A stretch of DNA of 64,000 bases, from assembly GCA_002269645.1 (NCBI GenBank), contig NIVC01001681.1, positions 1 to 64,000 of the forward strand. The letters run 5' to 3'. The notes under the pieces were generated by a model. It saw only the letters and a program-made list of their open reading frames with translations, was not told the origin of the DNA and did not search any database. Positions 3,001-55,498 of the stretch are shown here, one piece after another. Position 1 is the stretch's first letter; each line of letters begins with the position of its first letter. Source of the stretch: Macrostomum lignano. Lineage: Eukaryota. The position numbers were made by a program, and so were the translations under genes.

Positions 3001-6000
3001 GTAAAAATCATAGAAGCGTCATGTAAAAAATCGTGGAAGCGTCATGAAAATATCATAGAAGCGTCATGTAAAAATCATAGAAGCGTCATGAAAAAATCAT
3101 AGAAGCGTCATGTAAAAATCATAGAAACGTCATGTAAAAATCATAGAAGCGTCATGTAAAAATCATAGAATCGTCATATAAAAAGCATAGAAGCGTCCTG
3201 CAGAAATCGTAGAAGCATCATGTAAAAATCATAGAAGCGTCATGTAAAAAATCATAGAAGCATCATGTAAAAATCATAGAAGCGTCATGTAAAAAATCAT
3301 AGAAGCGTCATGTAAAACATCATAGAAGCCTCCTGCAGAAATCGTAGAAGCATCATGTAAAAATCATAGAAGCGTCATGTAAAAAATTGTGGAAGCGTCA
3401 TGAAAATATCATAGAAGCGTCATATAAAAAATCATAGAAGCGTCATGAAAATATCATAGAAGCGTCATGTAAAAAATCATAGAAGCGTCATGTAAACAAT
3501 CATAGAAGCGTCATGTAAAAAATCATAGAAGCGTCATGTAAACAATCATAGAAGCGTCATGTAAAAAATCATAGAAGCGTCATGTAAACAATCATAGAAG
3601 CGTCATGTAAAAAATCATAGAAGCGTCATGTAAACAATCATAGAAGCATCATGCAAAAAATCATAGAAGTGTCATGTAAAAAATCATGGAAGCGTCATGT
3701 AAAAATCATAGAAGCGTCATGAAAAAAATCATAGAAGTGTCATGTAAAAAATCATAGAAGCGTCATGTAAAAAATCATAGAAGCGTCATGTAAAAAATCA
3801 TAGAAGCGTCATGTAAAACATCATAGAAGCGTCCTGCAGAAATCTTAGAAGCATCATGTAAAAATCATAGAAGCGTCATGTAAAAAATCTTGGAAGCGTC
3901 ATGAAAATATCATAGAAGCGTCATGTAAAAATTCATAGAAGCGTCATGAAAATATCATAGAAGCATCGTGTAAAAAATCATAGAAGCGTCATGTAAACAA
4001 TCATAGAAGCGTCATGTAAAAAATCATAGAAGCGTCATGTAAAAAATCATAGAAGCGTCATGTAAAAAATCATAGAAGCGTCATGTAAAAATCATAGAAG
4101 CGTCCTGCAGAAATTGTAGAAGCATCATGTAAAAATCATAGAAGCGTCATGTAAAAAATCGTGGAAGCGTCATGAAAATATCATAGAAGCGTCATGTAAA
4201 AATTCATAGAAGCGTCATGAAAATATCATAGAAGCGTCGTGTAAAAAATCATAGAAGCGTCATGTAAACAATCATAGAAGCGTCATGTAAAAAATCATAG
4301 AAGCGTCATGTAAACAATCATAGAAGCGTCATGTAAAAAATCATAGAAGCGTCATGTAAACAATCATAGAAGCATCATGTAAAAAATCATAGAAGCGTCA
4401 TGTAAACAATCATAGAAGCGTCATGTAAACAATCATAGAAGCGTCATGCAAAAAATCATAGAAGTGTCATGTAAAAAATCATGGAAGCGTCATGTAAAAA
4501 TCATAGAAGCATCATGAAAAAATCATAGAAGTGTCATGTAAAAAATCATAGAAGCGTCATGTAAAAAATCATAGAAGCGTCATGTAAAAAATCATGGAAG
4601 CGTCATGAAAAAATCATAGGAGCGTCATGAAAAAATCATAGAAGCGTCCTGCAGAAATTGTAGAAGCATTATGTAAAAATCATAGAAGCGTCATGTAAAA
4701 AATCATAGAAGCATCATGTAAAAATCATGGAAGCGTCATGTAAAAATCATAGAAGCGTCATGAAAAAATCATAGAAGTGTCATGTAAAAAATCATGGAAG
4801 CGTCATGTAAAAAATCATAAAAGCGTCATGTAAAAATCATAGAATCGTCATATAAAAAGCATAGAAGCGTCATGTAAACAATCATAGAAGCGTCATATAA
4901 AAAGCATAGAAGCGTCATATAAACAATCACAGAAGCGTCATAAAAAAATCATGGAAGCGTCATGCAAAAAATCATAGAAGTGTCATGTAAAAAATCATGG
5001 AAGCGTCATGTAAAAATCATAGAAGCGTCATGAAAAAATCATAGAAGCGTCATGTAAAAATCATAGAAACGTCATGTAAAAATCATAGAAGCGTCATGTA
5101 AAAATCATAGAATCGTCATATAAGAAGCATAGAAGCGTCATGTAAACAATCATAGAAGCGTCATATAAAAAGCATAGAAGCGTCATATAAACAATCACAG
5201 AAGCGTCATGAAAAAATCATGGAAGCGTCATGCAAAAAATCATAGAAGTGTCATGTAAAAAATCATGGAAGCGTCATGTAAAAATCATAGAAGCGTCATG
5301 TAAAAATCATAGAAGCGTCATGTAAAAAGTCATGGAAGCGTCATGTAAAAATCATAGTAGCGTCACGTAAAAAATCATAGAAGCGTCATGAAAAAATCAT
5401 AGAAGCGTCATGAAAAAAACATAGGAGCGTCATGAAAAAATCATAGAAGCGTCATGTAAAAATCATAGAAGCGTCATGTAAACAATCATAGAAGCGTCCT
5501 GCAGATATCGTAGAAGCGTCATGAAATAATCATAGAAGCGTCATGTAAAAAGCATAGAAGCGTCATGTAAAAAATCATGGAAGCGTCATGTAAAAATCAT
5601 AGTAGCGTCATGTAAAAATCATAGAAGCGTCATGAAAAAATCATAGAAGCGTCATGTAAAAATCATAGAAGCGTCATGTAAAAATCATAGAAGCGTCATG
5701 TAAAAATCATAGAATCGTCATATAAAAAGCATAGAAGCGTCCTGCAGAAATCGTAGAAGCATTATGTAAAAATCATAGAAGCGTCATGTAAAAAATCATA
5801 GAAGCATCATGTAAAAATCATAGAAGCGTCATGTAAACAATCATAGAAGCGTCATGTAAAAAATCGTGGAAGCGTCCTGCAGAAATCGTAGAAGCATCAT
5901 GTAAAAATCATAGAAGCGTCATGTAAAAAATCGTGGAAGCGTCATGAAAATATCATAGAAGCGTCATGTAAAAAATCATAGAAGCGTCATGAAAATATCA

Positions 6001-7340: not shown

Positions 7341-9414
7341 AGGACTCAAATTAGAACATAGTGTCTTACTACTTAGGTACTAACCACTACTGTGGACTTT
7401 CTAAGAAAGTCAAGTAGAAATAAGTATTAACAATAAAATTTCTTAGGCAAGAATAATTAGAGCTAGGCCTATATCAACTTGGTAGCATTTTGCAATATAG
7501 AACAAAAATATGTCGAATAGATTTATGCCAATTGTGAGATTATAGAAACAGAAGTAGTATAAGACCTATAACAACTTGGTGGCATCTGTAGAAGTTTCAT
7601 AGTCAAGACATTTAGCTCCATTAACAACTTTGTGACAAAGGGTGGGATTTTAATAAAGCAGAAATAAGCATTACTATATATATAAATGATAGATATCTAT
7701 CTTTGATATCATCATTGAAATAGTCAGTCTCAGTAGTATATAGAATTCATATGATAGATATTTGCCATGCCCAATCACACTTTTCATAAAAGTATAGACT
7801 GGGGTATCACATATAAAACCCAAATTATTTTAGGTCTATTGTTGTCTATTTAGCCACCAATTGGTAAATTTTAAAAGATCTTTATGGCATTATAGCTATA
7901 ATGAATATTAAGCATGTTTAAAGAATGAAAATGCATGAAATATAGACCTAGGCTAGTAGAAAAGTAAGTTTTAAGAATGAGTTTAGTTCTTGAAACTCTA
8001 GAATACTGCTGACTAAAAGTTGAACTAAAACCTAGAAGACTTGCTATTGTTGATGCTATACTTACTAAAATAAGCATTTTAGTTGTCTTTTGGTCTAAGA
8101 AATTCAAGTTTTATAATACCTAGAAGCTGCTAAGTAATGGCTCTTAGATTGCACTAGGCATTAAGAATGATATATTGTTATTGCAGAAATATTGCTTTTT
8201 CTTAGACTCAATCAAATTTGATTATAGTCATGATCTGGCTCTAATAGGAATTATAGGTATTGACTTGCCAGATTGAGAAGCAATAAATGGTATGCTTAGA
8301 GATGAAAGGTGGTGGTCACTATCATTGATCCCATTATCTCTATCAAAGTCAAAGCTATTGCTCTCTTTACTATTGAAAGGGTGACTATTCTTATGCTGTA
8401 GCTTATTTGTATTTGATTCTAGGGAAGTTATATAAATAAATTTATTTAGATAACACTTCTGCTTGCAAGATAGTATATATTCTATATCAAGATTTTTGTC
8501 TATGTCAAATAGATTTTTTTAATATAATCTAGGCACTTTTTCTTTGCATTTTCATGCAACTAGAAAATGCTGGACTTCATAATTACAGGGTATCCAATCC
8601 AATCCAATCAGCAGCAACAATAACTTGATTAATGCAATGCTGTTAGAGTTGTCTTATTGTCTATCATTTGATGGGAAATATGCTATTGATTAATTGCTTG
8701 CAAGCCAAGTAATTGGGATTGGCTCAACCTAGGAAGTTTCAATGCCTAGGCTGGCCTGAACACTAATAAAATTCATTGGTGGCTAAAAGAGATTTAGTAA
8801 ATATAATATTCTATTAATTAATCTATAAATTATAAGAAATACAATCTTATAATAAAGACTTTGGACCAATGAGACTTTGAAAGATATTTTAGTATTTTTT
8901 TCATATTTTGTTTGATTCTTTTTGCTTGTATAAAAAGCCTTGTGCTTTTAAAATTCTTAGCAAGGTCTTAGGACCAGAATGCATAGAAGATCATAAAAAA
9001 GAATTATAAAAACAAAATAAAAGAAAAAAGAACACAGAATATAATACAGCAAAATTTAGGGAAATGTGTCAAAAAAGTTGCAGCTTTTTCTTTTTTCTTC
9101 AATTTGATGCCTAGGTGCAACTTATGTGCAACTTTCTACTGGCAGTAGGAACAATAGTTTATGTAAATTTCTAGTCTTTAATGTGATGTCCTAAAGATGA
9201 CTTGTGGAAGCAAAGTTAAAGGTATCCTGAAATTGTCTTGAGTTATAAGATATGGATAGTATGAACTAATAATTGATATTCCAGTTTGTCTTTTAGATCG
9301 ATGTTATTACGATATCCTCGTAGTAAGGAATGAATATAATATAATATGCCAAAATTCTATCCTGCTGCTTCTTATCCTCATCGCTGTTGCCCCTGTTCAA
9401 GCAAGCAGCCCAGC

Positions 9415-9786
9415 ATGGCCCTGTCCAAGCGACTCAACGTCCGCCTGCCCCCGGAGGTGAACCGCATTCTGCTAGTAAAAAATCTGCCATTCAGCATCAG
9501 CGCCGAGGAGATGTACGACATCTTTGGCAAGTACGGCGCGATCAGGCAGATTCGGGTTGGCAACACGCCAGAGACTCGGGGCACTGCTTTTGTTGTTTAC
9601 GAGGACATATTCGACGCTAAGAACGCGTGCGATCACCTGTCTGGCTTCAATGTGTGCAATCGCTACCTGGTTGTGCTTTATTATCAGCCAACAAAGGTGC
9701 AGAAGAAGGTCAGCGTAGAGACCAAGCGAGAGGAGATTGACAGAATCAAAGCCAAGTACGGTTTGGGCACGCCTAAGGCTCAGTGA
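9415..9786 (+). CDS. SF3B6: Splicing factor 3B subunit 6 (SF3b14/p14), RRM protein, intronless, 123 aa
   Basis: [91 protein letters not shown] is nearly identical to animal SF3B14. The true ATG is at 9415, not the ORF-track start at 9346. AATAAA at 10165. Confidence 0.96.
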
Positions 9787-10350
9787 AGCCAAGTAAATTG
9801 TCTGCGCGAACTTACTTTTGTAACTACTGCGTATATTGATGCGCTTGTAATTTTCGACCTAATCTGTATTTTGATAGTTAATTTGTGGGCTCTGTTAAAA
9901 TTTTTTTCCTGCCGAAGCTGGTTTTATGCAAAAATGAAAAAAAAGCTGTTGAAATTAAAATATAGCTGTAAATTTAAATATTCTATTAATATTTGAAATC
10001 TATGGCTAACTACTTCAAGTAGTATCAGTTTGTTTTACGTTTTATTTTATTATTATATTGTATATTATCACTTAACTGATTAGAATTCGGGTGGAGAAAT
10101 GAAGTGCTCATAAATTTATAGACGAGAATAAGCTGCTGAACAACCTAGTTATTCAGACTCAGGTAATAAATTTAGTCTTTTTTATCTTAAAAGTTTGTAT
10201 TGTTTTTCTTGCACTAGTGCCTATACTGCAGCGCAGACCCATTAGTCTGGATTAAAAAGTTGACGATGATTAATAATGAGAGAGGCGAGTTAATCCATTT
10301 AATTTATGAGATTTTGATCCAGTCTTAATCACCTGAGTTCCGTTTCGGAA

Positions 10351-11030
10351 CAGTTCTAATATATTCGGGGTGAGATTCCGGGCGGTCCTATATTCGGGGT
10401 GAGATTCCGGGCAGTCCTATATTCGGGGTGAGATTCCGGGCAGTCCTATATTCGGGGTGAGATTCCGGGCAGTCCTATATTCGGGGTGAGATTTCGGTAC
10501 AGTCCTATATTCGAGGTGAGATTTCGGTACAGTCCTATATTTGGGGTGAGATTTCGGTAGTCATATATTTGGGGTGAGATTTCGGTACAGTCCTATATTC
10601 GGAGTGAGATTCCGGGCAGTCCTATATTCAGGGTGAGATTTCAGTACAGTCCTCCTATATTCGGGGTGAGATTTCGGTAGTCATATTTGTGGTGAGATTT
10701 CGGTACAGTCCTATATTCGGGGTGAGATTCCGGGCAGTCCTATATTCGGGGTGAGATTTCGGTACAGTCCTATATTCGAGGTGAGATTTCGGTACAGTCC
10801 TATATTTGTGGTGAGATTTCGGTACAGTCCTATATTCGGGGTGAGATTCCGGGCAGTCCTATATTCGGGGTGAGATTTCGGTACAGTCCTATATTCGAGG
10901 TGAGATTTCGGTACAGTCCTATATTTGGGGTGAGATTTCGGTAGTCCTATATTTGGAGTGGGATTTAGGGCAGTCCTATATTCGGTGGAGGGAATTTCGA
11001 AGTAGTTCTGTCATATTTAGGGTGAGATTT
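10351..11030 (+). repeat. Minisatellite, 29-30-bp unit TATATTCGGGGTGAGATT(C/T)CGG(G/T)(C/A)CAGTCC, ~22 copies, between SF3B6 and RAD54
   Basis: Directly visible. Each unit contains the G|GTGAGA donor-like motif. Confidence 0.93.
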
Positions 11031-11142
11031 TATTAAATAAATTTGTCTAGCACAATGAGACTCAGCAAGCGTAGGTATTTAGGCCTTCAGGATTAGCCCG
11101 GCCTGTTTAGTGCTTAAGCCCGACCGGTTTGCACTTTTGCAG

Positions 11143-14100
11143 CGGCGAAGTCTCGCGCCCAGCCGTTCCGTTGTGGGCGGAGAGGCCGCCACACAAGTCT
11201 CCACAGGCGAGCGGCCATGCTATCGGGAGGCCGACTCTGAGAGCGAATCTGACGAGGTAAACAGACTGAAACTGCCCCTGTGCCGTCCCTACACTCTAGC
11301 TATCTAGAATTTCCCATACACTCTAGCTATCTAGAATTTCCCCTATACTGTAGCTATATAGAATTTCCCCTATTACTGTCGCCCCATAGATATAAAAAAT
11401 GAAAAGAATTGCATAGAAGTGAAATAGAAAAATCTTCTAATAAAGCCAATTAGACTATTAACTAGAAGAGTTCATTGAATTGGCCTACTTATAGTAGCAT
11501 TGTATTGTTTAATTATAATATTTGCTAAAAACCCCATCTTCTCTTGTCTATAACGTTCGACAAAAACGTTATCTTTGCATTGTGAGCTATTGGTCTGCGA
11601 GCCAGAGAACCGGGAAGTGGAACGAGATGCAATGCCAAGCTAAGATAATGGGAAAACCTAGTTATAGCGATTTTGTCCGCATCGATCTCATGGAATCCTA
11701 CTAATGGAGTAAGTAATACAGAGGTCTACGCAAGTGAGCAGAGAGAGCAGTGCTCCGGGAGGCTGGGATGAGAGAGAGAAATAAGAGAGTGAAAGCGAGT
11801 AAGAACGGTACTGGGCTGCTCCGCATGCGTCTCTGTCACGCGGCTGATAAGACTGCTCCAGTAATTAAGTCTGACTTGACTGGCTCCTTCGCTACGCGTT
11901 GACTTTCAACCTCTCGCCCGCTACCGCGTTCCGCCCCGGCGTTTTTTTAATCAGTTCTTGTCGAGAAATTGCGATCCTCCTCGTCTCTCTCTCTCCTTAC
12001 TCTGCAGAGTAAGTGAGACGTGTCGGCGCTGTGGATTTTTATTATTTCTTGAAAAAATTCAGTAGCGTTTATTAATAATTATAATTTATTCCTTATTCGC
12101 TTGGATTGGTGAGCTAGAGAGAAATCGAACGGATTGGATTAATTAACTGGGCGCTTTGGTCTCTTTGTGTTTGTCTTCAACTCAGGGCATCGGAGGTGGT
12201 ACAGTCACCGAATCAATTTTTCTGGCATAGCCAAGGTCAAGGAGATCTTGAACGAGAATTTTGATTATTAACTCTCTCTCTCTCTTCAAAGGAAGGAAGG
12301 AACATTTTTGGCATTGCTAGTGCATTTAGCGTGCTTACGGTGGAGAACACAGCACTGAATGAGGTTTTGCCATAGAGAAATTGAGTAAATAAAAATGCAC
12401 GACAATTTCCTTTACCGTCCTCCAGCTCATTTCCAAGAAAATCGAGTGTAGCGTTCCGATCCCCTCTACTTCAGCTGACCATGGCTCTCATTTAAAAGCT
12501 GAATAAACTGGCCGTGTTCACTAAAAAAACATGCCATTATGAATAATTGATCACTATATCATGAAATAGCAAGTCGGAATAATGAACCAGACTGCTATCG
12601 CTTTTATATAATGTCTGAAAAAGTGATGGTTTAAGAGTTTCTACTACAGACTCTTATCCAAGGTGTCCTTGGCCCTAGTTGCAGAGATGTGTTGCTCGGT
12701 GACGAATAAGCAGACTAGATGCAAGGATGCAAGACTAGATTATAGAATCGGGAATAATTTTTCTGTGCGACTATTCATCGATTTTTGCATTCTGTTTTCC
12801 CTCCTTGCCAGTAGGGACCTTTGATGTTAACGCTTTGTGGTCCTTTGGTATACAAGGTGTGGCCAGAAAGTAACGAGAATCAATCGTATTCGCAGGGCCT
12901 CATCCATCGCGAGTTATTTTGCCACAGGGACAGACTGTGAATTAGCAATTTTATCGTGAAGTTCCAAAAGGTTGATGCTGAGCATGCGGCGGGTTTGACA
13001 TGAACAGTGGGAGAACAAAGCCTGGCTGCTGCATCGCGACAACGCACCAGCGCACAAAGCACCTTCAGTGCAACAGTTTTTTTGACTGAAAAACGAGTCG
13101 CAAGCTGAGCCATACACCTTATTCGCCAGACACTGTCCCGTGCGATTTCTGGCTCTTCCCCAAGGTGAAGCAAGCTCTCAAAAGATCACGATTTGAAGAT
13201 CTGGAAAACATGAAGAGCAACATGAAAAGCGTCTTGCGAGGCATCTAAACGGAGGGCTTCCAGGAGTGCATCTGGAGCTGGCACCATTGAGAGCGGGGAA
13301 TACTTTTAGGGCTGCAGCTCACTTAAAATATTCATTTTTTGTGCACAACCAGATCATAGTAAAATTGTTTTTTTGTTGTTTTTTTCTGGCCACACTTTGT
13401 ATTGTTTTTGCCATCTCTATGAAATTACTAGCTAAGGTGCACTTCTTTCTACGGCAGCTCAACAAGACGCAAGACGCTCAACAAGAACTTGCATAAAACT
13501 GGCAGACTTTTTCGCCAATTTACTTTTTAAAAGGCATCTGGATATCGAAGCAAAAAACAATTATTGCCCTAGTAGCATTGACTTAAAAACAAAGCTATAA
13601 CTCAGATTGTCCTTTAAAAGACGAAAATTTGAATCTCATTTTAAATCTACGAGTATAATATACTCGTATACTCGTAATAAAGCTGACGCAAATATGACGG
13701 CACCGTGTATTTTTTGCATCTCAAAAACTACTATACCAATTGTAACTCTAACAATAAAGTTTAAAACGTTAACGTTTTGTTATTGTAGATTCTAGTGCAA
13801 GTTTACCTAACTTACTCGTATTTTGGTCTCATCCTTAAGGATATAAGTACATCAAGTAGGTAAATCAAGTTGTCGTCGTCAGGAAGGTTTCGGGCGTGAC
13901 ATGCTATCCTGTGTGAAGCAGCGCCAATGTATTAGACCTGAAACCGCATCGATTATTTGGATTTCACTTCAGTAAATTATCTCCTCCAACAGAGAAGCGC
14001 CGCTAATAAGATTAAAGCTGAAGCCGAAATCTTGAATAATCAGGGCTCCTACCTGTGGACCATAGACAAGAGTCTGGAGACTAAAAATAGACTAAATGTC

Positions 14101-17100
14101 TTCGCCAATGACAACTTAATCACTCAGGACGGTAAACTCGAAAATCATGGCGAAAAAAGTCTCGTCCTTAAGGAGTGATTAAGTTGTCCTTGGTCTCCGT
14201 GGCCGTGCTGTCTATAGAACTCTATAGCTTTGCGTTTGAGTCAAGCATTTCTATAAACAATGCTTCGCCTCGGCCAATCAACGCAGTCCTCAGTCTTGAC
14301 TATGGGCCAGATAAATCAGTCCATGGGGGTGATACCTTATACTTACTGGGTGAACACTTAAAATCTGGAATTTCCGAGTTTAGGCCATAGACAGCGGCTG
14401 CTAGCTGCTATGAAGCCAGAAACTTACTGAGATGCTCTCACACTCACTAGCTATCAGTTCTGCAGCAGCAAAACTAGCAGCTCAAACCCTAACGAGCCAT
14501 GCAGTCACTTAACGAAGAGCAGCGCAGACGCCTGGTCGTACAGTACAAAACTGAGCACCCCGGACAGAGCAACCATGCCATTGCTAAGTACTTCGCTGAG
14601 GTTGGGGTGGCACGCTCCACAGTCTACGCCATTCTGAATCGTTACGAAGAAGGCGGCGAAGAATCTGTGCTGCGCAGTGCTGGTTCAGGCTGCCACAGGA
14701 CGGAGCTCAAGGTCACGAACGCGGAAGTGAAGAACATCGTGAAGGACGCGCAACGAGGACTGTCGCAGCGGGAGATCGCGCGCAAGTTTGACATCAGCCA
14801 AGCTTATGTGGGGAAAATTCTTCAGGAAAATGGCCTGAAAGCTTATAAGAAGGAGAAAGTACCAGCGGTTACTGATCAGCAGCGAGAGAGACAGCAGGTG
14901 CGTGTTGGCAGACTGTACCGAACCATCTTGGACGGACGCGGAGGCGACTTGGATCTCGTCATCGATGATGAGTCGTACTTCCACATGTCCAGCCAAATGA
15001 TTCCTGGCAACAGCTTCTACTATGCCACTGCACGCGGCGACGCTCCTGTCGAGAAGCGCGTTTCACCTCAAAAGAAGTTCGGCGACAAGATCCTGGTGTG
15101 GCTGGCCATCAGCAGGCACGGGGCTTCGCGAGTGTACATGTGTCACTCCAAGACGATGAACAAGGAGCTGTACGCAAACGAGTGCATTCGCAAGCGGCTG
15201 GTGCCATTTCTCAATGAGCAGCACAGCGATGGAAATTACCTGTTCTGGCCAGATCTGGCCTCCTGCCATTACGCCAAGGACGTGATCGAGGTGTTCCAGC
15301 AGCTGGACATCAACTTTGTCTCGAAGGAGCAGAATCCTCCCTGCGTGCCTCACCTTCGTCCAATCGAGCACTTTTGGGGCATTTTGAAGCAGCAGGTGTA
15401 CCATCATAGTTGGCAGGCTCAGACACTTCAGCAGCTGAAGAACAGAATCAAGAAATGCCTGAGGGAGATGGACTGGTCCGTTGTACATCACATGATGGGA
15501 CAGGTCAAGTCGCAGATTCGCAGGGCGCGCGCTGATGGCTTTTAATCGGCTTATTGTTAACTCTATGATGATTCCTGTTTCTTGTTGAATACTTTCCTGT
15601 TAAAAAGTTTAGTTATCCTGTTTATAACGCCACGAAATATAAACATTTAGAGACGTCCAGATTTTAAGTGTTCACCCAGTATATCACGACTCCCTCTGTG
15701 AACTTTATAAAGTCCTTCATATCTCAAAGAGCACGTGTACTTATATTTAAGCTTAGATCGACTGCTCTGACAGTGATTAGAATTATCGCAGGCCTGGTCT
15801 AGCAGCTCCTATTTCTCTTCGCCTCTCTCCCCTCTCAATCTATCTGATGGTTTTAGGTCTTATTCAGGGTTCTCTTCCTGTTTGTGCCTTGTCATCCCGC
15901 AATCTGCAACTAATTTTTGCAACTATGGAAAGAGAGGGTAGAGACTATTGAATCCAACCAGCTTCTGTCTCATCTCTCCGTCTTCTCGACTATCTTTCAT
16001 CAGGCACGGGAGTTATAGATCCATATTTCAGAGTCCAAGACAGTAGTCGTTATATTTTACACGTATTACACAGTCGACATATAGTTTACACATATATGCA
16101 TTTACACACTTTATATTGCTAAGTATGTACGATATACAGGGTATACTGTACAAGATGCTAGTTATTAAATTCTGCACTTTTGTTTTCGATTGAAATGCAG
16201 TTGACAGGTTATCTGCAGTCCTGGGTGTCAAAACGTTGATTCGCTACATAGGAAGCTTCGTAACTGAGGAAGCTCCATAGTAGCTGAGGAAGCTCCATAG
16301 TAGCTGAGGAAGCTCCATCGTAACTGATGAAGCTCCATAGTAACCAAGGACGCTCCATCGTAGCCAAGGAATCTCCATATGCATAGTGTGTAACTGGAGA
16401 ACCTCTATAGTAGCTGAGGAAGATCTACAGCAGCTGTAGAAGATCTACAGTAGCTGGAGAAGATCTACAGTAGCTGGGTATAGCTTGAACGCTATCTATT
16501 TCACTCCATGCTGTAGATCTAGCAGTCCATTTCGTTAGTAGTCCTTGATTCGGCAAGTTGGTCACAGTCTCACCCTTGTCCAACCAGCGGCGCGCAGTTC
16601 TCACTTTAGCCTGCCTTTTTCTCTCAACCTCTTTGCGGGCTTGCATAAATGCATGAGTGTGGCTCCGGTGTCCAGTCCGCTATTCCGGGATTCTATCATA
16701 ACTATATTTTGGCTTCGCATCGTACTGCGGCTGGTTGAAGAATTTTTGACGCTAATTTTTATTGGCTCTGCCTCTTTGTTTCTTTCTCCCGGGCCTAATC
16801 CTGTCGCATCATATTTTCCCCTATTCCATAACAGGAGCCGTCGGGCAAGAGGTCTCGCAAAGCTGGCGCGGTTGCTAAGAAGAAAACTAGCGCAACAGCA
16901 GTTGACGGCCTTGAATACGCGTCGCCATTTCGTCGGCCACTGGTAGCCGCCCAGTCTCCGTCATTGTCTGGCGATTGTCTGCCCAAGAGTGAGCATGTAA
17001 GTTGCTATTCTGCTTGCCAGCCTGATTTTGAGCCTGCGTCAGTAGTATTAGTAGCAGGGGGGATGGTAGTAGTAGTAGCAGGGGGGATGGTAGTATTAGT

Positions 17101-20100
17101 AGCAGGGGGGATGGTAGTAGTAGTAGCAGGGGGGATGGTAGTAGTAGTAGCAGGGGGATGGTAGTAGTAGTAGCAGGGGGGATGGTAGTAGTAGTAGCAG
17201 GGGGGATGGTAGTAGTAGTAGCAGGGGGATGGTAGTAGTAGTAGCAATGTAGTAGTTGTAATAGTAACAGTAGTAGTAGTAGTAGTAATTGTAGTAGTAG
17301 TAGTAATATTAGTAGTAGTAGTAGTAGTAGTAATATTAGTAGTAGTAGTAGTAGTAGTAGTAGTGCTCACTGCGTATTTATGAAAATGTGAACGGCATCT
17401 AATGCACTTGTACGAGTACTTGCTTTCAAAGGCGAGTAATTCAATAGCATTCCATTAGCATTATTCTTCGACAGTATTGCTAAACTTGCAGTATTCCTAA
17501 TAACCACTGACATTTAAACAGAATAAATTACCAAAAATCATTTCAATAACTCAGACCATCTTTTGATGTCCTTCTTTAAGAGCTGAAAATTGAGAATATA
17601 AAATCCTCTCGCAATCAAATCAGATTGTATGGCATAGCTAAGCAGGATTCCAGTGCTGCTCGATTATATTTTTCACGCTTAATCGCATTATATTAGATGG
17701 ATGGCGCGAGGTTGCGTGCTATAAATACTGGCGGCTACTCGCTCCCGATGGGTCCTGCTGGTTAATCAGCTTCATTAACCGCTTGCCCGTCGCTTCAACT
17801 ATATTCAATGTTGACCGCGGCCTTAAGTAAAGCATAGATAGATTAATATATGCCACTATCTGCACACACACGCGCGCGCGAGATCAACTATGAAAGTGCC
17901 TTTAGTGCAGTCCTAACTAATTGCATGAACGACAGCTTTTTGCATATTTACAGTTAGTGCAGCTTCTACCGTATTGGCTCGTGGTAGAGTTTGGTTCGTT
18001 TGCATTTTAAACAGTTTAGGAAGCTCCATAGTAACTTAGGAAGCTCCATAGTAACTTAGAAAGCTCCATTGTAACTTAAAAAGCTCCATAGTAACTTAGG
18101 AAGCTCCATTGTAACTTAGAAAGCTCCATAGTAACTTAGGAAGCTCCATAGTAACTTAGGAAGCTCCATAGTAACTTAGAAAGCTTTATAGTAACTTAGA
18201 AAGCTCCATAGTAACTGAGGAAGCTCCATAGTAACTTAGAAAGCTCCATAGTAACCGAGGAAGCTCCATAGTAACTTAGAAAGCTCCATAGTAACTTAGA
18301 AAGCTCCATAGTAACGGAGGAAGCTCCATAGTAACTTAAAAAGCTCCATAGTAACTTAGAAAGCTCAAAAGTAACTTAGAAAGCTCCATAGTAAGTTAGA
18401 AAGCTCCATAGTAACTTAGAAAGCTCCATAGTAACTTAGAAAGCTCCATAGTAACGGAGGAAGCTCCATAGTAACTTAAAAAGCTCCATAGTAACTTAGA
18501 AAGCTCAAAAGTAACTTAGAAAGCTCCATAGTAAGTTAGAAAGCTCCATAGTAACTTAGAAAGCTCCATAGTAACTTAGAAAGCTCCATAGTAAGTTAGA
18601 AAGCTCCATAGTAACTTAGAAAGCTCCATAGTAAGTTAGAAAGCTCCATAGTAAGTTAGAAAGCTCCATAGTAACTTAGAAAGCTCCATAGTAAGTTAGA
18701 AAGCTCCATAGTAAGTTAGAAAGCTCCATAGTAAGTTAGAAAGCTCCATAGTAAGTTAGAAAGCTCCATAGTAAGTTAGAAAGCTCCATAGTAACTTAGA
18801 AAGCTCCATAGTAACTTAGAAAGCTCGATAGTAACTTAGAAAGCTCCATAGTAGCTAGGGAAGCTTCCAAGCAGTAATCATGCTTCGAAGTAGCTGTTAC
18901 ACTGAGAGGAAGCTTGGTGAAGAGAACTAATATAACGACTCACACATCTTAGAAGTGCGTCTGCATGTATGCCTCCCGTTAAAAACGAAACGTGACCAGA
19001 ATCGCTAGTGTGATTGCAAACAGCTCACTAGTGACTCTAGCGACTCTGAGGCGACTCTTGTGACTTTTTAACGACTCAAGCGACTGTAATCCAACGGATA
19101 GGTGACTGTTGAGTCACGAGCGCATCACGCGAGTTGTAGAATTGTAACACGAGTCTCGGAAAAAGTCGTCCAAGAGTCGCTGTGTTTGCGCTTGACTTTC
19201 TACTAACTCAAGTAGACTAAATAGAGTTGTTAAAAATGCGAAATGCGATTTTAATTCATTAAGTGACGCAGATGCGCTTTAGACGCAACTCGGGGATTGT
19301 ACAGCGACTCTGGCAGGCCTCAGATAGGACTCTACCGCCCTAGAGTCATTTCAGAGTCGCATTCAATAAAGCGTCTTAAATTGACTTAAATTGACTTTGG
19401 GGCAACTGGTTACCGCGAAATCTCGTTTTTAGAGTCGTTTATTAAGAGTCACTTATTTCCTTTTTTACCTGTAACGACGCAACTGACTCTTCTTGGCCTT
19501 GGTGCCGTTTTCATCAGGCCTTAAAGTGTCGGGCCGGCGGCCCACATCCTGTGCTACAGCATTAATCTGCCGCTATTCTTCCCACAGGAGGCGCTCATCA
19601 AATCGATCCTGTCGCGGCCATTCAAAGTGCCCATCCCGAACTATCAAGGCGGCTGCGGCCTCGGCCGGGCTCTGGGCATCCGGCGTCAGGCTGGTCGCGC
19701 TCCGCTGCACGATCCGCAGGCGGAAGGCGCCTTAGTTCTGTACTCGCCGCCGGAGTTAAGCGCGCACGAACAGCTGCGCGCCGATCCGGAGAAGGTGCCG
19801 GTGCACGTTGTTGTTGACCCGGTGCTAACCCGTGTGCTGCGACCGCACCAGCGCGAGGGAGTTAAATTTATGTACGATTGCGTCACCGGAGTGCAGATTC
19901 CCGGCTCATACGGCTGCATCATGGCCGACGAGATGGGCCTGGGCAAGACTCTGCAGTGCGTCACCCTGGTGTGGACGCTGCTCAAACAGAGTCCGGACTG
20001 TCGGCCCACAGTTGACAAAGCCGTGATCGTCTGTCCGAGCAGTCTGGTCCGCAATTGGGCCAATGAATTTGCCAAATGGCTCGGCCAGCGCGTCCGAACT

Positions 20101-23006
20101 CTGGCCGTTGACAACGGTGGCAAGGACGATATCGATCGGGATCTGGCAGCTTTCATGCAGTCGGTTGGTCGCCGGGTAGCTCACCCAGTTCTGATCATCT
20201 CCTACGAGACCTTCCGGCTGCACGCCGCCGTGCTGCACCGCGGCTCAGTCGGCTTAATTATCTGCGACGAAGGTCATCGGTTAAAGAATTCTGAGAATCT
20301 CACTTATCAGGTGCGTTTGATCTTAACTATGTCGGGAGTGCCAGTGTCGCTACGAGAGGGTGTCAAAGTCACTGTGCGGGTGTCAGGGTCACTAGAGATA
20401 TGTCAGGGGCACTAGAGATTAGTGTCAGGGGTACTAGAGATAATTGTCAGGGGCACTAGAGATAATTGTCAGGGGCACTAGAGATTAGTGTCAGGGGCAC
20501 TAGAGATAATTGTCAGGGGCACTAGAGATTAGTGTCAGGGGCACTAGAGATTAGTGTCAGGGGCACTAGAGATAATTGTCAGGGGCACTAGAGATTAGTG
20601 TCAGGGGCACTAGAGATAATTGTCAGGGGCACTAGAGATTAGTGTCAGGGGCACTAGAGATTAGTGTCAGGGGTACTAGAGATAATTGTCAGGGGCACTA
20701 GAGATAATTGTCAGGGGCACTAGAGATTAGTGTCAGGGGCACTAGAGATAATTGTCAGGGGCACTAGAGATTAGTGTCAGGGGCACTAGAGATAATTGTC
20801 AGGGGCACTAGAGATAATTGTCAGGGGCACTAGAGATAATTGTCAGGGGCACTAGAGATTAGTGTCAGGGGCACTAGAGATTAGTGTCAGGGGCACTAGA
20901 GATTAGTGTCAGGGGCACTAGAGATTAGTGTCAGGGGCACTAGAGATTAGTGTCAGGGGCACTAGAGATAATTGTCAGGGGCACTAGAGATAAGTGTCAG
21001 GGGCACTAGAGATAAGTGTCAGGGTCACTGAAGTGTTAATTGGGGTTCTGCTTGAAGTATGAATCCAAACTAATCTCTAATTTGCTTCATCTCTCGAATC
21101 TCGCAGGCGCTGGCCGCTATGCGCGTCGAACGTCGGATCCTGTTATCCGGCACTCCGATTCAGAACGACCTGTTGGAGTACTTCAGCCTGGTGCACTTCG
21201 TCAACCGTGGCATCCTTGGCACCGCGGCCGAATTTCGTCGCCACTACGAGGCGCCAATTTTGCGCGGCCGCGACGCCGGCGCCACCGACGCCGAGAAGGC
21301 GCGCGGAGAAGAACGACTCAAAGCTCTACTGGAAGTAGTTACTAAGTGCATTATTCGCCGGACTCAGGCTCTGTTGACTAAGTGAGTTTAATTGCACCGT
21401 TGCTTTTATTCGACTGAATTAGACTACTGTTTAGGGCGTCTGTTTAGCATTTTTCGTATAAACTTGCGCGGTTGGTTTACAAGTTTTTATTTTTATTTTT
21501 AACGATTGGAAATCGGAAGAAAGCTTTGCATTTTAAATTATTCGACTATTGTTCCCAGTGCTATGAATAACTTTGTCCAGCCTCTCTATCCGGCCCCCCT
21601 GTCCTTTTGAAACTTCACAATAGCAATCCGAGCCCGCTCAAGGTTTGTCTCGCTGCTCAGCTGTCTTTTCTAATGCCCTGTCCCAGTCTCCCTCCTCTCC
21701 TCTCCCTCCTCTCCTCTCCCTTTTCTCTCCCTCCTCTGGCTCGCCATCTGGCCATCTGGCCCTTGGGGCAAAAGTTTGCCTATCCCCCGACTGAGTGTTT
21801 ATTGATTTTATTTTTATTCACATTCGCGACTCTTTCCGGTATTACTTAGAACCGCCCTTTTCAAGGCCGCCATGTTTTTATTATTTTCATGCCTACTCTA
21901 CTATAAGTAGACGCCAGTGGACGCCTTTGGTCAATCGAGTTGTCCAAAGTCACTTCCTATTCTCAAATCGAAATCAATTTCTCAACTATTTCGCATTCGC
22001 ATCGCAACAAAACAGGTACCTGCCAGTGAAAACCGAGCTAGTCGTGAGCTGCCGCCTCACCCAGACCCAGGCCGACCTGTACACCGATTTCATTCGCCGG
22101 AAATCGGCCGACTGTCTTCAGTCGGGCAAGAGCGGCATCAGCGCCAGCGCACTGCAAGCGATTGGCACGCTGAAGAAGCTGTGCAATCATCCCAGTTTAG
22201 CTGACGAGTCTGTGCCGTTCAATCCGGAACTGTCTGGTAAATTTCGAGTACTCGACGTACTTTTAGCTACCATGAAAGCAACCACCTCGGACAAGGTGGT
22301 GCTGGTGTCCAACTACACCCAGACGCTGGACCTGTTCGAACGGCTGTGCCGGCACCGCGGCTATCTGTACGTTCGCCTCGACGGCAGCCTGTCAATCAAG
22401 AAGCGAGCCAAACTAGTCGCTCAGTTCAACAACCCAGCCTCGCCCGAGTTCGTTTTCATGCTCAGCTCCAAAGCTGGCGGCTGCGGCTTGAATCTTATCG
22501 GCGCCAATCGGCTGGTGATGTTCGACCCCGACTGGAACCCAGCCAACGATGACCAGGCCATGGCCAGGTCCTGGCGCGATGGCCAGGCCAAGGCCTGCTA
22601 TACCTATCGGTTTATCGCCACGGGCACTATTGAGGAGAAGATTTTGCAACGCCAGGCGCATAAGAAAGCGCTGAGCAGCTGCGTTGTTGACCAAGAGGAC
22701 GATGTTGAACGGCATTTCTCGATTGGCGAGCTGCGCGAGCTGTTCGGATTGAAGCAGGATACGCTGAGCGAGACGCATGACAAGTTCAAGTGCCGCCGCT
22801 GCGTTAATGGCATTCAGGTGAGCGTCTGTCTGCCTGTGTCTGTCTGTCTGTGTCTGTCTGTCTGTGTCTGTCTGTCTGTGTCTGTCTGTGTCTGTCTGTG
22901 TCTGTGTGTCTGTGTCTGTGTCTGTCTGTCTGTGTCTGTGTCTGTCTGTCTGTGTCTGTCTGTCTGTCTGCCTGTCTGTCTGTCTGTGTCTGTCTGTGTG
23001 TCTGCC

Positions 23007-23059
<53 letters not shown>

Positions 23060-23236
23060 TTCTGTATCTGTCTGTCTGTCTGTCTGTGTGTCTGTCTGTC
23101 TGTCTGTCTGTCTGTCTGCCTGTCTGTCTGTCTGTCTGTCTGTCTGTGTCTGTCTGTCTGTCTGTCTTTCTGTATCTGTCTGTCTATGTCTGTCTGCCTG
23201 TGTCTGTCTGTCTGTCTGTCTGTGTGTCTGTCTGCC

Positions 23237-23287
<51 letters not shown>

Positions 23288-23643
23288 TTTTCTGTCTGCA
23301 TGTCTGTCTGTCTGTCTGTCTGTCTGTTTTTCTGTCTGTCTGTCTGTCTGTCTGTCTCTTTCACCTTTATTTGACCCCTGTCGCGCAGGTGCGGCCGCCG
23401 CCGGACGGTGCGGACTGCAACTCAGACCTGAGCCAGTGGCACCACTGCGCGGACCGCAAGGCCGTGCCGGATCTGTGCCTGAAGGCCTGCTTCGACACCA
23501 AGTGCATCACGTTTGTCTACTGGCAGCTGAGCCATGAGGAGGCCGGCAAAGACTCCGCGCCAATTACTGACGCCGACAAACAGGTCAATGATGAAGAGCC
23601 GGCGGATGCTGAGGAAAAAAACGCCTGTCCAGATGATGAATAA
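11143..23643 (+). CDS. RAD54L: DNA repair and recombination protein RAD54-like (SNF2 helicase); join(11143..11256,16835..16996,19588..20310,21107..21381,22016..22817,23389..23643); no genomic in-frame ATG
   Basis: Exons join in frame through GT-AG introns (phases 0,0,0,2,0) for 776 codons plus stop. Recognised motifs: RRSLAPS N-terminus, [29 protein letters not shown], motif [14 protein letters not shown] box, [44 protein letters not shown], and the C-terminal Zn-binding CRRC..HC region. Confidence 0.95.
12853..13399 (+). mobile_element. Internally deleted, decayed mariner (DD34D-type) element in RAD54 intron 1
   Basis: TA-flanked imperfect TIRs CAAGGTGTGGCCAGAAAG / TTTCTGGCCACACTTTG. The + strand carries frameshifted transposase remnants [12 protein letters not shown] and [18 protein letters not shown]. 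Confidence 0.85.
14346..15679 (+). mobile_element. Full-length Tc1/mariner-superfamily DD37E transposon (1334 bp) in RAD54 intron 1
   Basis: Perfect 24-bp TIRs CTGGGTGAACACTTAAAATCTGGA at 14346-14369 and 15656-15679, with TA on both flanks and an intact transposase ORF inside. Confidence 0.95.
14499..15545 (+). CDS. DD37E transposase, 348 aa
   Basis: N-terminal HTH regions ([10 protein letters not shown]; [21 protein letters not shown]). Catalytic motifs [18 protein letters not shown] and [10 protein letters not shown], with 37 residues counted between the second D and the E. Confidence 0.93.
   Translation: MQSLNEEQRRRLVVQYKTEHPGQSNHAIAKYFAEVGVARSTVYAILNRYEEGGEESVLRSAGSGCHRTELKVTNAEVKNIVKDAQRGLSQREIARKFDISQAYVGKILQENGLKAYKKEKVPAVTDQQRERQQVRVGRLYRTILDGRGGDLDLVIDDESYFHMSSQMIPGNSFYYATARGDAPVEKRVSPQKKFGDKILVWLAISRHGASRVYMCHSKTMNKELYANECIRKRLVPFLNEQHSDGNYLFWPDLASCHYAKDVIEVFQQLDINFVSKEQNPPCVPHLRPIEHFWGILKQQVYHHSWQAQTLQQLKNRIKKCLREMDWSVVHHMMGQVKSQIRRARADGF
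16250..16480. repeat. 20-bp minisatellite GTAGCTGAGGAAGCTCCATA (same family as 18017-18870)
   Basis: Directly visible, about 10 degenerate copies. Confidence 0.85.
17040..17368. repeat. (GTA)n microsatellite with 24-bp AGTAGTAGTAGCAGGGGGGATGGT units, start of RAD54 intron 2
   Basis: Directly visible. The poly-Thr ORF 17005..17370 is its translation. Confidence 0.9.
18017..18870. repeat. 20-bp minisatellite GTAACTTAGAAAGCTCCATA, ~42 copies, RAD54 intron 2
   Basis: Directly visible. Confidence 0.95.
19030..19490. mobile_element. Degenerate foldback/MITE-like segment built of GCGACTC and GAGTCGC motifs in alternating orientation
   Basis: GACTC clusters (19030-19085, 19300-19335) are followed by GAGTC clusters (19110-19180, 19340-19450). 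No TSD identified. Confidence 0.4.
20380..21030. repeat. 22-bp minisatellite GTCAGGGGCACTAGAGAT(AATT/TAGT), ~28 copies, RAD54 intron 3
   Basis: Directly visible, with two alternating variants. Confidence 0.95.
22823..23357. repeat. (TCTG)n/(TG) microsatellite filling RAD54 intron 5
   Basis: Starts about 5 nt after the GTGAG donor and ends about 30 nt before the acceptor. Confidence 0.95.
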
Positions 23644-24280
23644 AATATTATACAACTTTTTTTGGATTAAAACTGTACGTTTGCTTAACGAATTCCAGAC
23701 CTGTTTGCCAGCGTAAACGTGTACCAGTTGCAGTTGTGTTGTCATTGACCCAGATTTTCATAGTCAATGCTTAATATTCATTAGGTACAGGTATTGCGGT
23801 TTCTAGCTTGTATTAAGAATAAATTCTAATTCACAAGATTAAGTCACACCTGCGGTGCTTCTTATAAGATTTAAAGTTCATGGGTCTCAGTTTCTACAAA
23901 AAATTGTCAGCATTTATCATATCATTGATAATACAGCATTGCCAAATCATACTTTTGCATAAACCATTGGAATATTCAATTTTCAGTCCTTCTGCAAGCA
24001 TTTTTGTTTAGTTTTAATCAATTTTTTCCGTACTTTGTTTCCTAACAAAACCGTTTCCAGCCAATTCAGAAATATCATTTATTGTAGTTATGGTTATCTA
24101 CTACTCTCACCGTTTATTATGGTGTACTGCGATTTTTATTGGAAAATAACACCTGGTATTAGCAGTATAATCTGACAGCATTATGCCCAATTAATTTGCT
24201 ATGTTGCACTTGTCTTTTCACAGAGTAGTGTAATGTGAGTATTTTTACCTTTAGAGTAGTAATTGGATTTTTGGTAAGGA

Positions 24281-25150: not shown

Positions 25151-25491
25151 GGTTGTCGGGCTGGGGATCTGCTTAGTAGGACTGAGGCTCTTGACTATGG
25201 TTTGAGAATCTATGTAGGTTGTGGGATTAAAGATCAAGGTAATTAATCCAGACTATGGGAGTGAGAAACTAAAACCATGGAATCGGGACTCTCTACTTTG
25301 GGATATTTTCAAGATTTCGGTTCTAGGATTGGGATGTAGGATTTAGATTAAGAATCGGGGATCCGGACTTTCATAGTGATGATGCTGCAGGTTCTCACAG
25401 CCTGTCTCCCAATAATTCACCCGATGCCCAGTGGCCGGTCTCTGCTCAAGCTCCGCTCCGCCCGCAATTAACTCGAGTCCAGCGCTGCCCA

Positions 25492-45144: not shown

Positions 45145-55498
<10,354 letters not shown>

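What the first reader, a model, noticed from the sequence alone, without database searches (positions are those of the whole stretch)
9415..11256. RAD54 has no ATG of its own: candidate spliced-leader-donated start codon in an SF3B6-RAD54 operon
Seen: the first RAD54 coding exon starts at a clean acceptor (TTTTGCAG|CGG CGA AGT CTC GCG CCC AGC = RRSLAPS, 11143) in phase 0. Adding one ATG gives MRRSLAPS, the conserved RAD54L N-terminus. I found no ATG|GT between the SF3B6 stop (9786) and 11143. The only good upstream donor there (CAG|GTAATA, 10163) has an in-frame TGA and no ATG. The next in-frame Met is about 190 residues downstream. SF3B6 lies only 1.36 kb upstream on the same strand, with AATAAA at 10165. 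Established: flatworm spliced leaders end in AUG, and in Schistosoma this AUG can act as the initiator Met. Inference: RAD54 is a downstream operon gene whose full-length translation would depend on trans-splicing, coupling a U2 snRNP gene to a core HR repair gene.
Basis: partly seen in the sequence, partly recalled or inferred. Interest (0 to 1): 0.82.

Follow-up and report, generated by a model that had tools for sequence, protein, structure and literature searches.

The report
RAD54 start codon supplied by spliced leader
In the flatworm Macrostomum lignano the DNA-repair gene RAD54 has no start codon of its own and almost certainly gets its AUG from the trans-spliced leader RNA. This is a clean example of a mechanism known in flatworms since 2006, and it is already implicit in the public annotation.

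Summary
The window is Macrostomum lignano scaffold NIVC01001681.1:1-64000. RAD54 has six exons (11143-23643, 776 codons). It begins at TTTTGCAG|CGG CGA AGT (RRSLAPS) with no ATG. An in-frame stop lies 63 nt upstream, and the first in-frame Met is codon 187.

All three genomic copies share this structure. GenBank annotates each CDS as 5'-partial starting at or 3 nt after that acceptor. A published table flags the RAD54L gene cluster TRANSSPLICED. The M. lignano leader ends in ...TTGCATG, so leader plus exon reads MRRSLAPS.

New here: in seven other bilaterians the RAD54 ATG is the last three bases of exon 1 (ATG|GT) and exon 2 starts at RRS. So 11143 is the ancestral intron-1 acceptor, and the leader has replaced an ATG-ending first exon.

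The operon idea has only indirect support. The repeat-adjusted spacing is under 1 kb. In one paralogous copy SF3B6 and RAD54 carry the same transcriptional-unit prefix. The linkage is absent in the seven other species, and functional "coupling" is speculation.

The mechanism is known (Cheng et al. 2006), so this is a new member of a known kind, of modest interest.

The parts
9415..9786 (+). SF3B6 (p14) single-exon CDS, 123 aa. The GenBank CDS in this copy is 5'-partial from 9370.
   Evidence: ORF and translation. Pfam RRM_1, E=1e-14. The paralogous copy is named 'Splicing factor 3B subunit 6' by UniRef. Annotated start at 9370.
10165..10170 (+). AATAAA, the likely SF3B6 poly(A) signal. It lies 379 nt after the stop and is conserved in all three copies.
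   Evidence: It aligns in all three copies. The function is inferred.
9787..11142 (+). Intergenic region, i.e. the outron of RAD54 (1356 nt). It holds no ATG|GT and no GT-terminated phase-0 ORF with an ATG.
10360..10985 (.). 30-bp tandem repeat, about 21 copies, each unit carrying a GTGAG donor-like motif. Copy number differs among the three gene copies, and it accounts for most of the variation in intergenic length (1356, 1299 and 1005 nt).
   Evidence: TRF. Three-copy alignment. GTRAG scan.
11080..11082 (+). In-frame TAG, 63 nt upstream of the exon. No in-frame ATG lies between it and 11143.
11135..11142 (+). TTTTGCAG, the spliced-leader trans-splice acceptor. It is homologous to the ancestral intron-1 acceptor of RAD54.
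   Evidence: Sequence. Fits the published motif [T/C]TNCAG. Identical in all three copies. Orthologue acceptors sit at the same codon boundary.
11143..11256 (+). RAD54 first genomic coding exon (codons 2-39 of the protein: RRSLAPS...SESESDE). No ATG; phase 0 at both ends.
   Evidence: Identical to the start of PAA65103.1.
16835..16996 (+). RAD54 exon 2 (contains the conserved SPFRRPL motif).
19588..20310 (+). RAD54 exon 3 ([11 protein letters not shown], helicase motif I). The first in-frame Met, codon 187, lies here.
21107..21381 (+). RAD54 exon 4.
22016..22817 (+). RAD54 exon 5.
23389..23643 (+). RAD54 last coding exon, ending at the stop TAA (23641-23643). An AATAAA at 23639 overlaps the stop.
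8287..8291 (+). The only ATG|GT (AAATG|GTATGC) in the 11.1 kb upstream of the acceptor. It is the candidate for the rival cis-spliced exon 1 and lies upstream of SF3B6.
   Evidence: Present in the paralogues too, but those flanks are 93-99% identical, so this is not informative.

Best explanation
RAD54 of Macrostomum lignano is made as a pre-mRNA whose 5' part (the outron, ending at 11142) is removed by spliced-leader (SL) trans-splicing. The 35-nt leader CGGTCTCTTACTGCGAAGACTCAATTTATTGCATG is joined to 11143. Its last three bases then become codon 1, and the mRNA reads AUG CGG CGA AGU... = MRRSLAPS, the conserved RAD54 N-terminus.

In other bilaterians the ATG is the last triplet of a cis-spliced exon 1 (ATG|GT), followed by a phase-0 intron. 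M. lignano has kept that intron's acceptor and lost the exon, and the leader (also ...AUG|GU) stands in for it.

The pre-mRNA probably starts at or upstream of SF3B6, giving a polycistronic unit resolved by trans-splicing. That step is less certain (about 0.55).

**Shown**
- The gene structure and the absence of any usable genomic ATG.
- The same structure in three copies.
- Conservation of the intron position in orthologues.

**Taken from published data**
- The leader sequence.
- The TRANSSPLICED flag.
- The annotated 5' ends.

**Inferred**
- That ribosomes start at the leader's AUG.
- That SF3B6 and RAD54 are co-transcribed.
For: **Identity**
- L003 equals window 1143-33643 of NIVC01001681.1.
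- My model equals PAA65103.1, which is marked 'partial'.

**No genomic start**
-.
- Without the leader, the first AUGs in the mRNA are out of frame (nt 75, a 7-codon ORF; nt 275, a 49-codon ORF). The first in-frame AUG would delete 186 conserved residues.

**Three copies**
- All three copies share ttttgcag|CGGCGAAGT.
- They are under purifying selection: 17 synonymous against 3 non-synonymous codon differences between the window copy and L001.

**Published data**
- The SL ends in ATG and the trans-splice motif is [T/C]TNCAG (PMC8629364).
- TBONE cuts transcripts at SL-read peaks after the leader has been trimmed off (PMC5730564).
- RAD54L cluster Mlig028462.g4/Mlig008284.g4/Mlig028462.g3 is flagged TRANSSPLICED and 'Neoblast, stringent' (PMC5816591 supplement).
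- In Macrostomum the terminal ATG of the SL is regarded as a translation start codon (PMC10468722).
- In S. mansoni more than 40 cDNAs need the SL AUG (Cheng 2006, as cited in PMC9851317).

**Orthologues**
- Clonorchis, Schistosoma spindale, Spirometra, Lingula, Haliotis, Branchiostoma and Xenopus all have ATG|GT followed by an exon that starts at RRS.

**Operon**
- In L002, SF3B6 is BOX15_Mlig028462g2 and RAD54 is BOX15_Mlig028462g3. A shared prefix means the same cluster of RNA-seq-assembled transcriptional units.
- The stop-to-acceptor distance is 1356 nt, of which 626 nt is tandem repeat. This is under the published 1-kb repeat-adjusted operon threshold.
Against: - I saw no RNA reads, so the SL-exon junction at 11143 was not observed directly. 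The TRANSSPLICED flag applies to the gene cluster and gives no coordinate.
- 5'-partial CDSs are common in this annotation and do not by themselves prove trans-splicing. SF3B6 and the downstream gene are also 5'-partial, and their starts are not at acceptors.
- A search for transcript-derived proteins covering the N-terminus found none.
- Flatworm SL acceptors are often also used for cis-splicing (PMC12582326).
- For the operon: in copy L001, SF3B6 has its own unit name (Mlig028138g1). The distance from poly(A) signal to acceptor is long for an operon (about 960 nt, or about 330 after subtracting the repeat). A promoter inside the outron cannot be excluded.
Confidence: 0.85

Rival explanations
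1. RAD54 is SL trans-spliced and uses the leader's AUG, but it is not in an operon. It would have its own promoter in the 1.36-kb region downstream of SF3B6, making it a monocistronic trans-spliced gene. This rivals only the operon part of the best explanation.
For: - About 60% of trans-spliced M. lignano genes are not assigned to operons.
- In copy L001, SF3B6 is a separate transcriptional unit (Mlig028138g1).
- SF3B6 has a conserved AATAAA about 960 nt before the acceptor.
- The SF3B6-RAD54 linkage is not conserved in 7 other species.
Against: - SF3B6 and RAD54 share the unit prefix Mlig028462 in copy L002.
- The repeat-adjusted distance is below the published operon threshold.
Confidence: 0.4
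2. A cis-spliced first exon ending in ATG still exists. It would be AAATG|GTATGC at 8287, or an exon further upstream, and would splice to 11143 with SF3B6 nested in RAD54 intron 1. In that case the start codon is genomic.
For: - This is the ancestral architecture in all 7 orthologues, with introns of 34 to 2094 nt.
- The 8287 site is present in all three copies.
- Sharing of SL acceptors between cis- and trans-splicing is common in flatworms.
Against: - No such exon appears in the RNA-seq-guided annotation of any of the three copies. All three start at the acceptor or 3 nt after it.
- The gene is flagged TRANSSPLICED.
- GTATGC departs from the GT[G/A]AG consensus.
- One ATG|GT in 11 kb is no more than chance. 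The paralogues have 8-10 per 10 kb.
- It would require a same-strand gene nested in the intron.
Confidence: 0.07
3. The leader's AUG is not used. Translation would start at a non-AUG codon or at Met187, giving an N-terminally truncated RAD54.
For: The context of the SL AUG (U at -3, C at +4) is weak by vertebrate rules. This is my own reading of the sequence.
Against: - The 186 codons before Met187 are open in all three copies.
- They are conserved across animals ([25 protein letters not shown]).
- Two out-of-frame AUGs precede Met187.
- The SL AUG is exactly in frame and exactly at the ancestral codon 1.
- Use of the SL AUG has been shown in Schistosoma.
Confidence: 0.04
4. Assembly or annotation artefact, or a decaying gene copy that has lost its start.
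For: M. lignano is a hidden polyploid with redundant scaffolds, and many of its gene models are partial.
Against: - Three independent scaffolds show the same structure.
- 17 synonymous against 3 non-synonymous differences.
- The ORF is complete and 64-68% identical to other animals' RAD54.
- The gene is expressed and neoblast-enriched.
Confidence: 0.02

Closest known systems
Flatworm SL 3'-terminal AUG used as initiator methionine (Cheng, Cohen, Ndegwa & Davis 2006, J Biol Chem 281:733; 'slORFs' in PMC9851317)
   Same: - The leader ends in AUG.
- The acceptor sits exactly at the first genomic codon.
- The AUG is in frame.
- No genomic start codon exists.
- A full-length conserved protein is made only if the SL AUG is used.
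   Different: - The species is a free-living macrostomorph, not Schistosoma.
- Translation from the SL AUG has not been tested for this gene.
- Here the ancestral state can be reconstructed: the leader replaces a pan-bilaterian ATG-terminated exon 1. Whether this has been described before I did not check; Cheng 2006, the primary paper, was not held.
SL-resolved operons of M. lignano (Wudarski et al. 2017; Ustyantsev & Berezikov 2021)
   Same: - Same-strand neighbours.
- The downstream gene is trans-spliced.
- A tandem repeat inflates the intergenic distance.
- The repeat-adjusted spacing is under 1 kb.
- The two genes share a transcriptional-unit name in one copy.
   Different: - The spacing is well above the about 100-nt mode.
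- Co-transcription was not seen directly.
- One copy annotates SF3B6 as a separate unit.
Phase-0 'start-codon introns' (Nielsen & Wernersson 2006, PMC1626468)
   Same: RAD54 orthologues have an intron directly after the ATG, and the M. lignano acceptor is at that position.
   Different: In M. lignano the donor side (the exon ending in ATG) is missing and is supplied in trans.
RAD54L / Rad54 SNF2-family recombination motor
   Same: - Domains Rad54_N, SNF2-rel_dom and Helicase_C.
- 64-68% identity to molluscan, brachiopod and amphioxus RAD54L over 88-96% of the length.
   Different: Nothing unusual in the protein itself. Only the source of codon 1 differs.

Membership tests
mRNA with SL-donated initiator AUG (flatworm type) | The organism's spliced leader ends in AUG | tested here: met
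   The window is M. lignano. The published SL is ...TTGCATG (PMC8629364; PMC10468722). No SL RNA gene lies in the window itself.
mRNA with SL-donated initiator AUG (flatworm type) | The gene is SL trans-spliced at an acceptor at the 5' edge of the ORF | tested here: met
   - The acceptor TTGCAG| fits the published motif.
- The RAD54L cluster is flagged TRANSSPLICED.
- The deposited CDSs begin at the acceptor or 3 nt after it in 3 of 3 copies.
- I did not see the junction reads themselves.
mRNA with SL-donated initiator AUG (flatworm type) | The SL AUG is in frame, and no genomic in-frame AUG is available upstream of the conserved N-terminus | tested here: met
   SL plus exon translates to MRRSLAPS. 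There is an in-frame stop 63 nt upstream (87 nt in the paralogues) with no ATG in between. No cis exon is possible in the intergenic region.
mRNA with SL-donated initiator AUG (flatworm type) | Homology requires a Met exactly at the junction | tested here: met
   Orthologues start MRRSLAPS or MRRSQAPS. Their ATG is separated from RRS by an intron at the same position.
mRNA with SL-donated initiator AUG (flatworm type) | Translation actually initiates at the SL AUG | not testable with these tools
   This needs N-terminal proteomics, initiation-site ribosome profiling or a reporter assay.
SL-resolved operon | Adjacent same-strand genes, with the downstream one trans-spliced | tested here: met
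   SF3B6 at 9415-9786 (+) and RAD54 from 11143 (+), in all three copies.
SL-resolved operon | Short intercistronic distance (published M. lignano criterion: under 1 kb after subtracting repeats) | tested here: met
   1356 nt minus the 626-nt tandem array gives 730 nt from the stop codon, or about 330 nt from the AATAAA.
SL-resolved operon | A polycistronic precursor RNA spans both genes | tested here: inconclusive
   SF3B6 and RAD54 share the unit prefix Mlig028462 (g2, g3) in copy L002, but SF3B6 has a separate unit name in L001. No reads were seen.
SL-resolved operon | No independent promoter for the downstream gene | not testable with these tools
   This needs RAMPAGE/CAGE data or reporter constructs.
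SL-resolved operon | Linkage conserved in related species (supportive, not strictly defining) | tested here: not met
   No SF3B6 within 2-10 kb of RAD54 in Clonorchis, Schistosoma spindale, Spirometra, Lingula, Haliotis, Branchiostoma or Xenopus.
RAD54 / RAD54L | Rad54_N, SNF2-related ATPase and Helicase_C domains, with high identity to RAD54L orthologues | tested here: met

The most novel reading that the evidence does not exclude
RAD54 would illustrate a general evolutionary route. Genes whose ancestral exon 1 ends exactly in ATG (start-codon introns, ATG|GT) can swap that exon for the flatworm leader (...AUG|GU) with no change to the protein. They can then lose the genomic exon and become obligately dependent on trans-splicing. 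A set of such essential genes would explain why the 3'-terminal AUG is kept in all reported flatworm leaders. In Macrostomum it would also place a core recombination gene of stem cells under SL and operon control.
Probability: 0.35. Interest if true: 0.55.

Novelty: new member of a known kind. Interest (0 to 1): 0.3.

Why it matters
**Practical value**
- The three GenBank RAD54 entries marked 'partial' are in fact complete once the leader's AUG is added.
- The UniProt models that read into the outron are wrong.
- The same fix probably applies to many M. lignano genes.
- Transgenes and knock-ins for RAD54 must keep the acceptor.

**Conceptual value**
- This locus shows both the before and after states of exon-1 replacement by a spliced leader. 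Seven of seven other bilaterians keep ATG|GT, while three of three Macrostomum copies have lost it.
- That makes the question of how genes become dependent on the SL AUG testable genome-wide.

It is not a new mechanism.

Tried and rejected
**Searches that led nowhere**
- A protein search with the N-terminal 123 residues, looking for transcript-derived proteins that might carry leader-derived sequence, returned one unrelated hit. I therefore got no read-level evidence.
- There is no SL RNA gene, Rfam family or tRNA in the window.
- The Schistosoma japonicum RAD54 locus was not on record.
- RAD54 is not mentioned in the supplements of two flatworm trans-splicing papers, so its SL status in parasites is unknown.
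- Wasik 2015 and Cheng 2006 are not held. Cheng 2006 is cited second-hand.

**Evidence I judged too weak to rely on**
- The published transcript length (2907 nt) was compared with the spliced distance from 11143 to the next acceptor-like site at 24223. The three copies give 2911, 2900 and 2909 nt. This is close but not exact, so it is suggestive only.

**Ideas rejected**
- A cis exon in the intergenic region.
- The ATGGT found in the paralogues' SF3B6 3'UTR: it is ATGGC in the window, the donor GTTAAC is poor, and it lies before the poly(A) signal.
Full report
**1. What the sequence is**

The window is the first 64 kb of Macrostomum lignano scaffold NIVC01001681.1 (assembly GCA_002269645.1, Mlig_3_7).
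- A locus fetched through the deposited protein equals window 1143-33643 base for base, and window coordinates equal scaffold coordinates.
- A tblastn lead and inspection of the splice sites give a six-exon RAD54 gene: 11143-11256, 16835-16996, 19588-20310, 21107-21381, 22016-22817 and 23389-23643. It has 776 codons.
- The translation is identical to GenBank PAA65103.1, 'BOX15_Mlig008284g1, partial'.
- It is 64-68% identical to RAD54L of molluscs, brachiopods and amphioxus.
- SF3B6 is the single-exon ORF at 9415-9786. It has a Pfam RRM_1 hit, and UniRef names the paralogous copy 'Splicing factor 3B subunit 6'.

**2.

- The first RAD54 exon begins directly after ttttgcag with CGG CGA AGT CTC GCG CCC AGC, which reads RRSLAPS. 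That heptapeptide is expected 0.0015 times by chance in the six-frame translation of the window.
- An in-frame TAG lies 63 nt upstream (11080-11082), with no in-frame ATG between it and the exon.
- The intergenic 1356 nt contain nine ATGs. None is followed by GT, and no GT of any quality ends a phase-0 ORF that contains an ATG.
- The only ATG|GT in the whole 11.1 kb upstream is at 8287, which lies upstream of SF3B6.
- In an mRNA without a leader, the first two AUGs are out of frame (7-codon and 49-codon ORFs). The first in-frame AUG is codon 187, which would remove the conserved N-terminal domain.
- One detail of the finding is wrong. CAG|GTAATA at 10163 is not the only good donor, because the 30-bp tandem array at 10360-10985 and its flank carry 21 GTGAG motifs. 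None of them follows an ATG, so the conclusion stands.

**3. Three gene copies agree**

M. lignano is a hidden polyploid.
- Two further scaffolds (L001 = NIVC01000445.1 and L002 = NIVC01003490.1) carry the same arrangement of SF3B6, RAD54, a small DAG1-like gene and an MFS gene.
- The acceptor and first exon are identical in all three copies.
- The intergenic regions are colinear. They differ mainly in the copy number of the tandem repeat, giving lengths of 1356, 1299 and 1005 nt.
- The coding sequences differ by 17 synonymous and 3 non-synonymous codons between the window copy and L001. These are therefore functional genes and not decaying copies.

**4. Published RNA evidence**

- M. lignano has one spliced leader, CGGTCTCTTACTGCGAAGACTCAATTTATTGCATG. 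The motif enriched at its acceptors is [T/C]TNCAG, and TTGCAG fits it (PMC8629364).
- The Mlig_3_7 annotation was built by trimming the leader from RNA-seq reads, mapping them, and cutting assembled transcriptional units at the resulting peaks with the TBONE pipeline. ORFs were then called with TransDecoder (PMC5730564).
- Trimming removes the ATG. A gene that depends on the leader's AUG therefore ends up as a 5'-partial CDS starting at the acceptor, which is exactly what is deposited for all three RAD54 copies.
- In the supplementary table of PMC5816591, the RAD54L cluster (Mlig028462.g4, Mlig008284.g4, Mlig028462.g3) is flagged TRANSSPLICED and classed 'Neoblast, stringent'.
- A later Macrostomum genome paper states that the terminal ATG of the leader is likely a translation start codon, and it deliberately left that ATG untrimmed (PMC10468722).
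- Leader plus exon reads AUG CGG CGA AGU = MRRSLAPS.
- A caveat applies. 5'-partial CDSs are common in this annotation: SF3B6 and the downstream gene are also partial, and their starts are not at acceptors. The argument therefore rests on the flag, the acceptor and the reading frame together, and I saw no reads myself.

**5. Comparison with orthologues (new here)**

I fetched the RAD54 loci of seven other bilaterians. In every one the ATG is the last triplet of exon 1 and is followed directly by GT. The next exon starts right after an AG with RRSLAPS or RRSQAPS.

| Species | Group | Junction after the ATG | Intron 1 length |
|---|---|---|---|
| Clonorchis sinensis | trematode | ATG\|GTAGGT | 44 nt |
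| Schistosoma spindale | trematode | ATG\|GTGAGT | 34 nt |
| Spirometra sp. | cestode | ATG\|GTAATT | 37 nt (exon missed by the annotators) |
| Lingula anatina | brachiopod | ATG\|GTAAGA | 124 nt |
| Haliotis cracherodii | mollusc | ATG\|GTAGGT | 1086 nt |
| Branchiostoma floridae | amphioxus | ATG\|GTGAGT | 2094 nt |
| Xenopus laevis | frog | ATG\|GTGAGT | 1969 nt |

- A phase-0 intron between codons 1 and 2 is therefore ancestral for bilaterian RAD54. Such introns are a known, over-represented class (PMC1626468).
- The M. lignano acceptor at 11143 is that intron's acceptor. What is missing is the ATG-ending exon.
- The leader ends in the same ...AUG|GU, so it can replace that exon without changing the protein.
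Parasitic flatworms do not lack the ATG, whereas Macrostomum does in all three copies.

**6. Operon**

For:
- The two genes are on the same strand and the downstream gene is trans-spliced.
- A conserved AATAAA lies 379 nt after the SF3B6 stop.
- The stop-to-acceptor distance minus the tandem array is 730 nt. This is under the published repeat-adjusted 1-kb operon criterion, and the same paper notes that repeats inflate operon spacers.
- In copy L002, SF3B6 is BOX15_Mlig028462g2 and RAD54 is BOX15_Mlig028462g3. A shared prefix denotes one cluster of assembled transcriptional units. The two genes share no sequence, so I infer that at least one assembled unit spanned both.

Against:
- In L001, SF3B6 has its own unit name (Mlig028138g1). 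There RAD54 instead shares its prefix with the downstream DAG1-like gene (Mlig008284g2 and g3).
- The spacer is long.
- No SF3B6 lies near RAD54 in the seven other species.

I put co-transcription at about 0.55. A functional 'coupling' of splicing and recombination has no support.

**7. What is known, and the verdict**

- All reported flatworm leaders end in AUG. [quoted passage not shown] 2006, as cited in PMC9851317 and PMC12582326).
- Operons and widespread trans-splicing of conserved, neoblast-enriched genes are described for M. lignano.
- The finding is therefore real and correctly read, but it is a further member of a known class, and its raw facts are already in public annotation.
- What adds some value is the clear ancestral-state reconstruction (exon-1 replacement) and the practical correction of the gene models.
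- Confidence that the leader supplies the start codon is 0.85. Interest is 0.3.

Noticed in passing
window 14499-15545 (+), inside RAD54 intron 1 (11257-16834): An intact 348-aa ORF with HTH_23/HTH_28 and DDE_3 domains, i.e. a Tc1/mariner-like transposase. It helps explain the 5.6-kb first intron.
   Followed up: partly
window 10360-10985; L001 and L002 intergenic regions: A 30-bp tandem array sits between SF3B6 and RAD54. Every unit carries a consensus 5' splice-site-like GG|GTGAGAT. Unit-like matches number 20, 15 and 8 in the window copy, L002 and L001. Whether an array of U1-site-like motifs in a putative intercistronic spacer has any role is unknown.
   Followed up: partly
window 23639-23644, 24215-24223 and 25429-26067: - The RAD54 stop TAA is embedded in an AATAAA.
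- A good acceptor-like site, ttttcacag|AGTAGTG, lies at 24223.
- The next gene (212 aa, weak DAG1 hit, 5'-partial in all copies) shares the transcriptional-unit prefix Mlig008284 with RAD54 in copy L001.
- The unit may therefore contain three genes.
   Followed up: partly
window 16940-16996 (end of RAD54 exon 2): The UniProt models from the older ML2 assembly (A0A1I8IDR7, A0A1I8JAC7, A0A1I8IR01) read 17-22 codons into the outron. They also skip the 18 codons [18 protein letters not shown], which implies an in-frame alternative donor (CTG|GTAGCC) 54 nt upstream of the annotated one.
   Followed up: no
window 9346-9414: SF3B6 has an in-frame upstream ATG at 9346 (146-aa ORF). GenBank starts the CDS at 9370 (5'-partial, not at an AG), and the paralogues start at -21 or at the ATG itself. 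The true 5' end of SF3B6, and whether it is itself trans-spliced, is unresolved.
   Followed up: no
L010 10056-10095 (Spirometra sp. Aus1, CM118279.1): The deposited RAD54 model (696 aa, starting MLHKCAQV...) misses the real 5' end. An ATG|GTAATT mini-exon, a 37-nt intron and an RRSLAPSQ exon are present in the genome.
   Followed up: yes
L002 about 23390-23416: The L002 RAD54 copy has a divergent C-terminus (...EEKMMMMNKML instead of ...[10 protein letters not shown]).
   Followed up: no
window 11287-11390; 1-6000; 47500-59800: - A 27-bp tandem repeat lies just after the exon-1 donor.
- The first 6 kb are A-rich, with AT skew of about 0.35.
- The region 47.5-59.8 kb is GC-rich with strongly skewed composition. 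It has long overlapping ORFs on both strands and only low-complexity Pfam hits, so it is probably satellite or low-complexity repeat.
   Followed up: no
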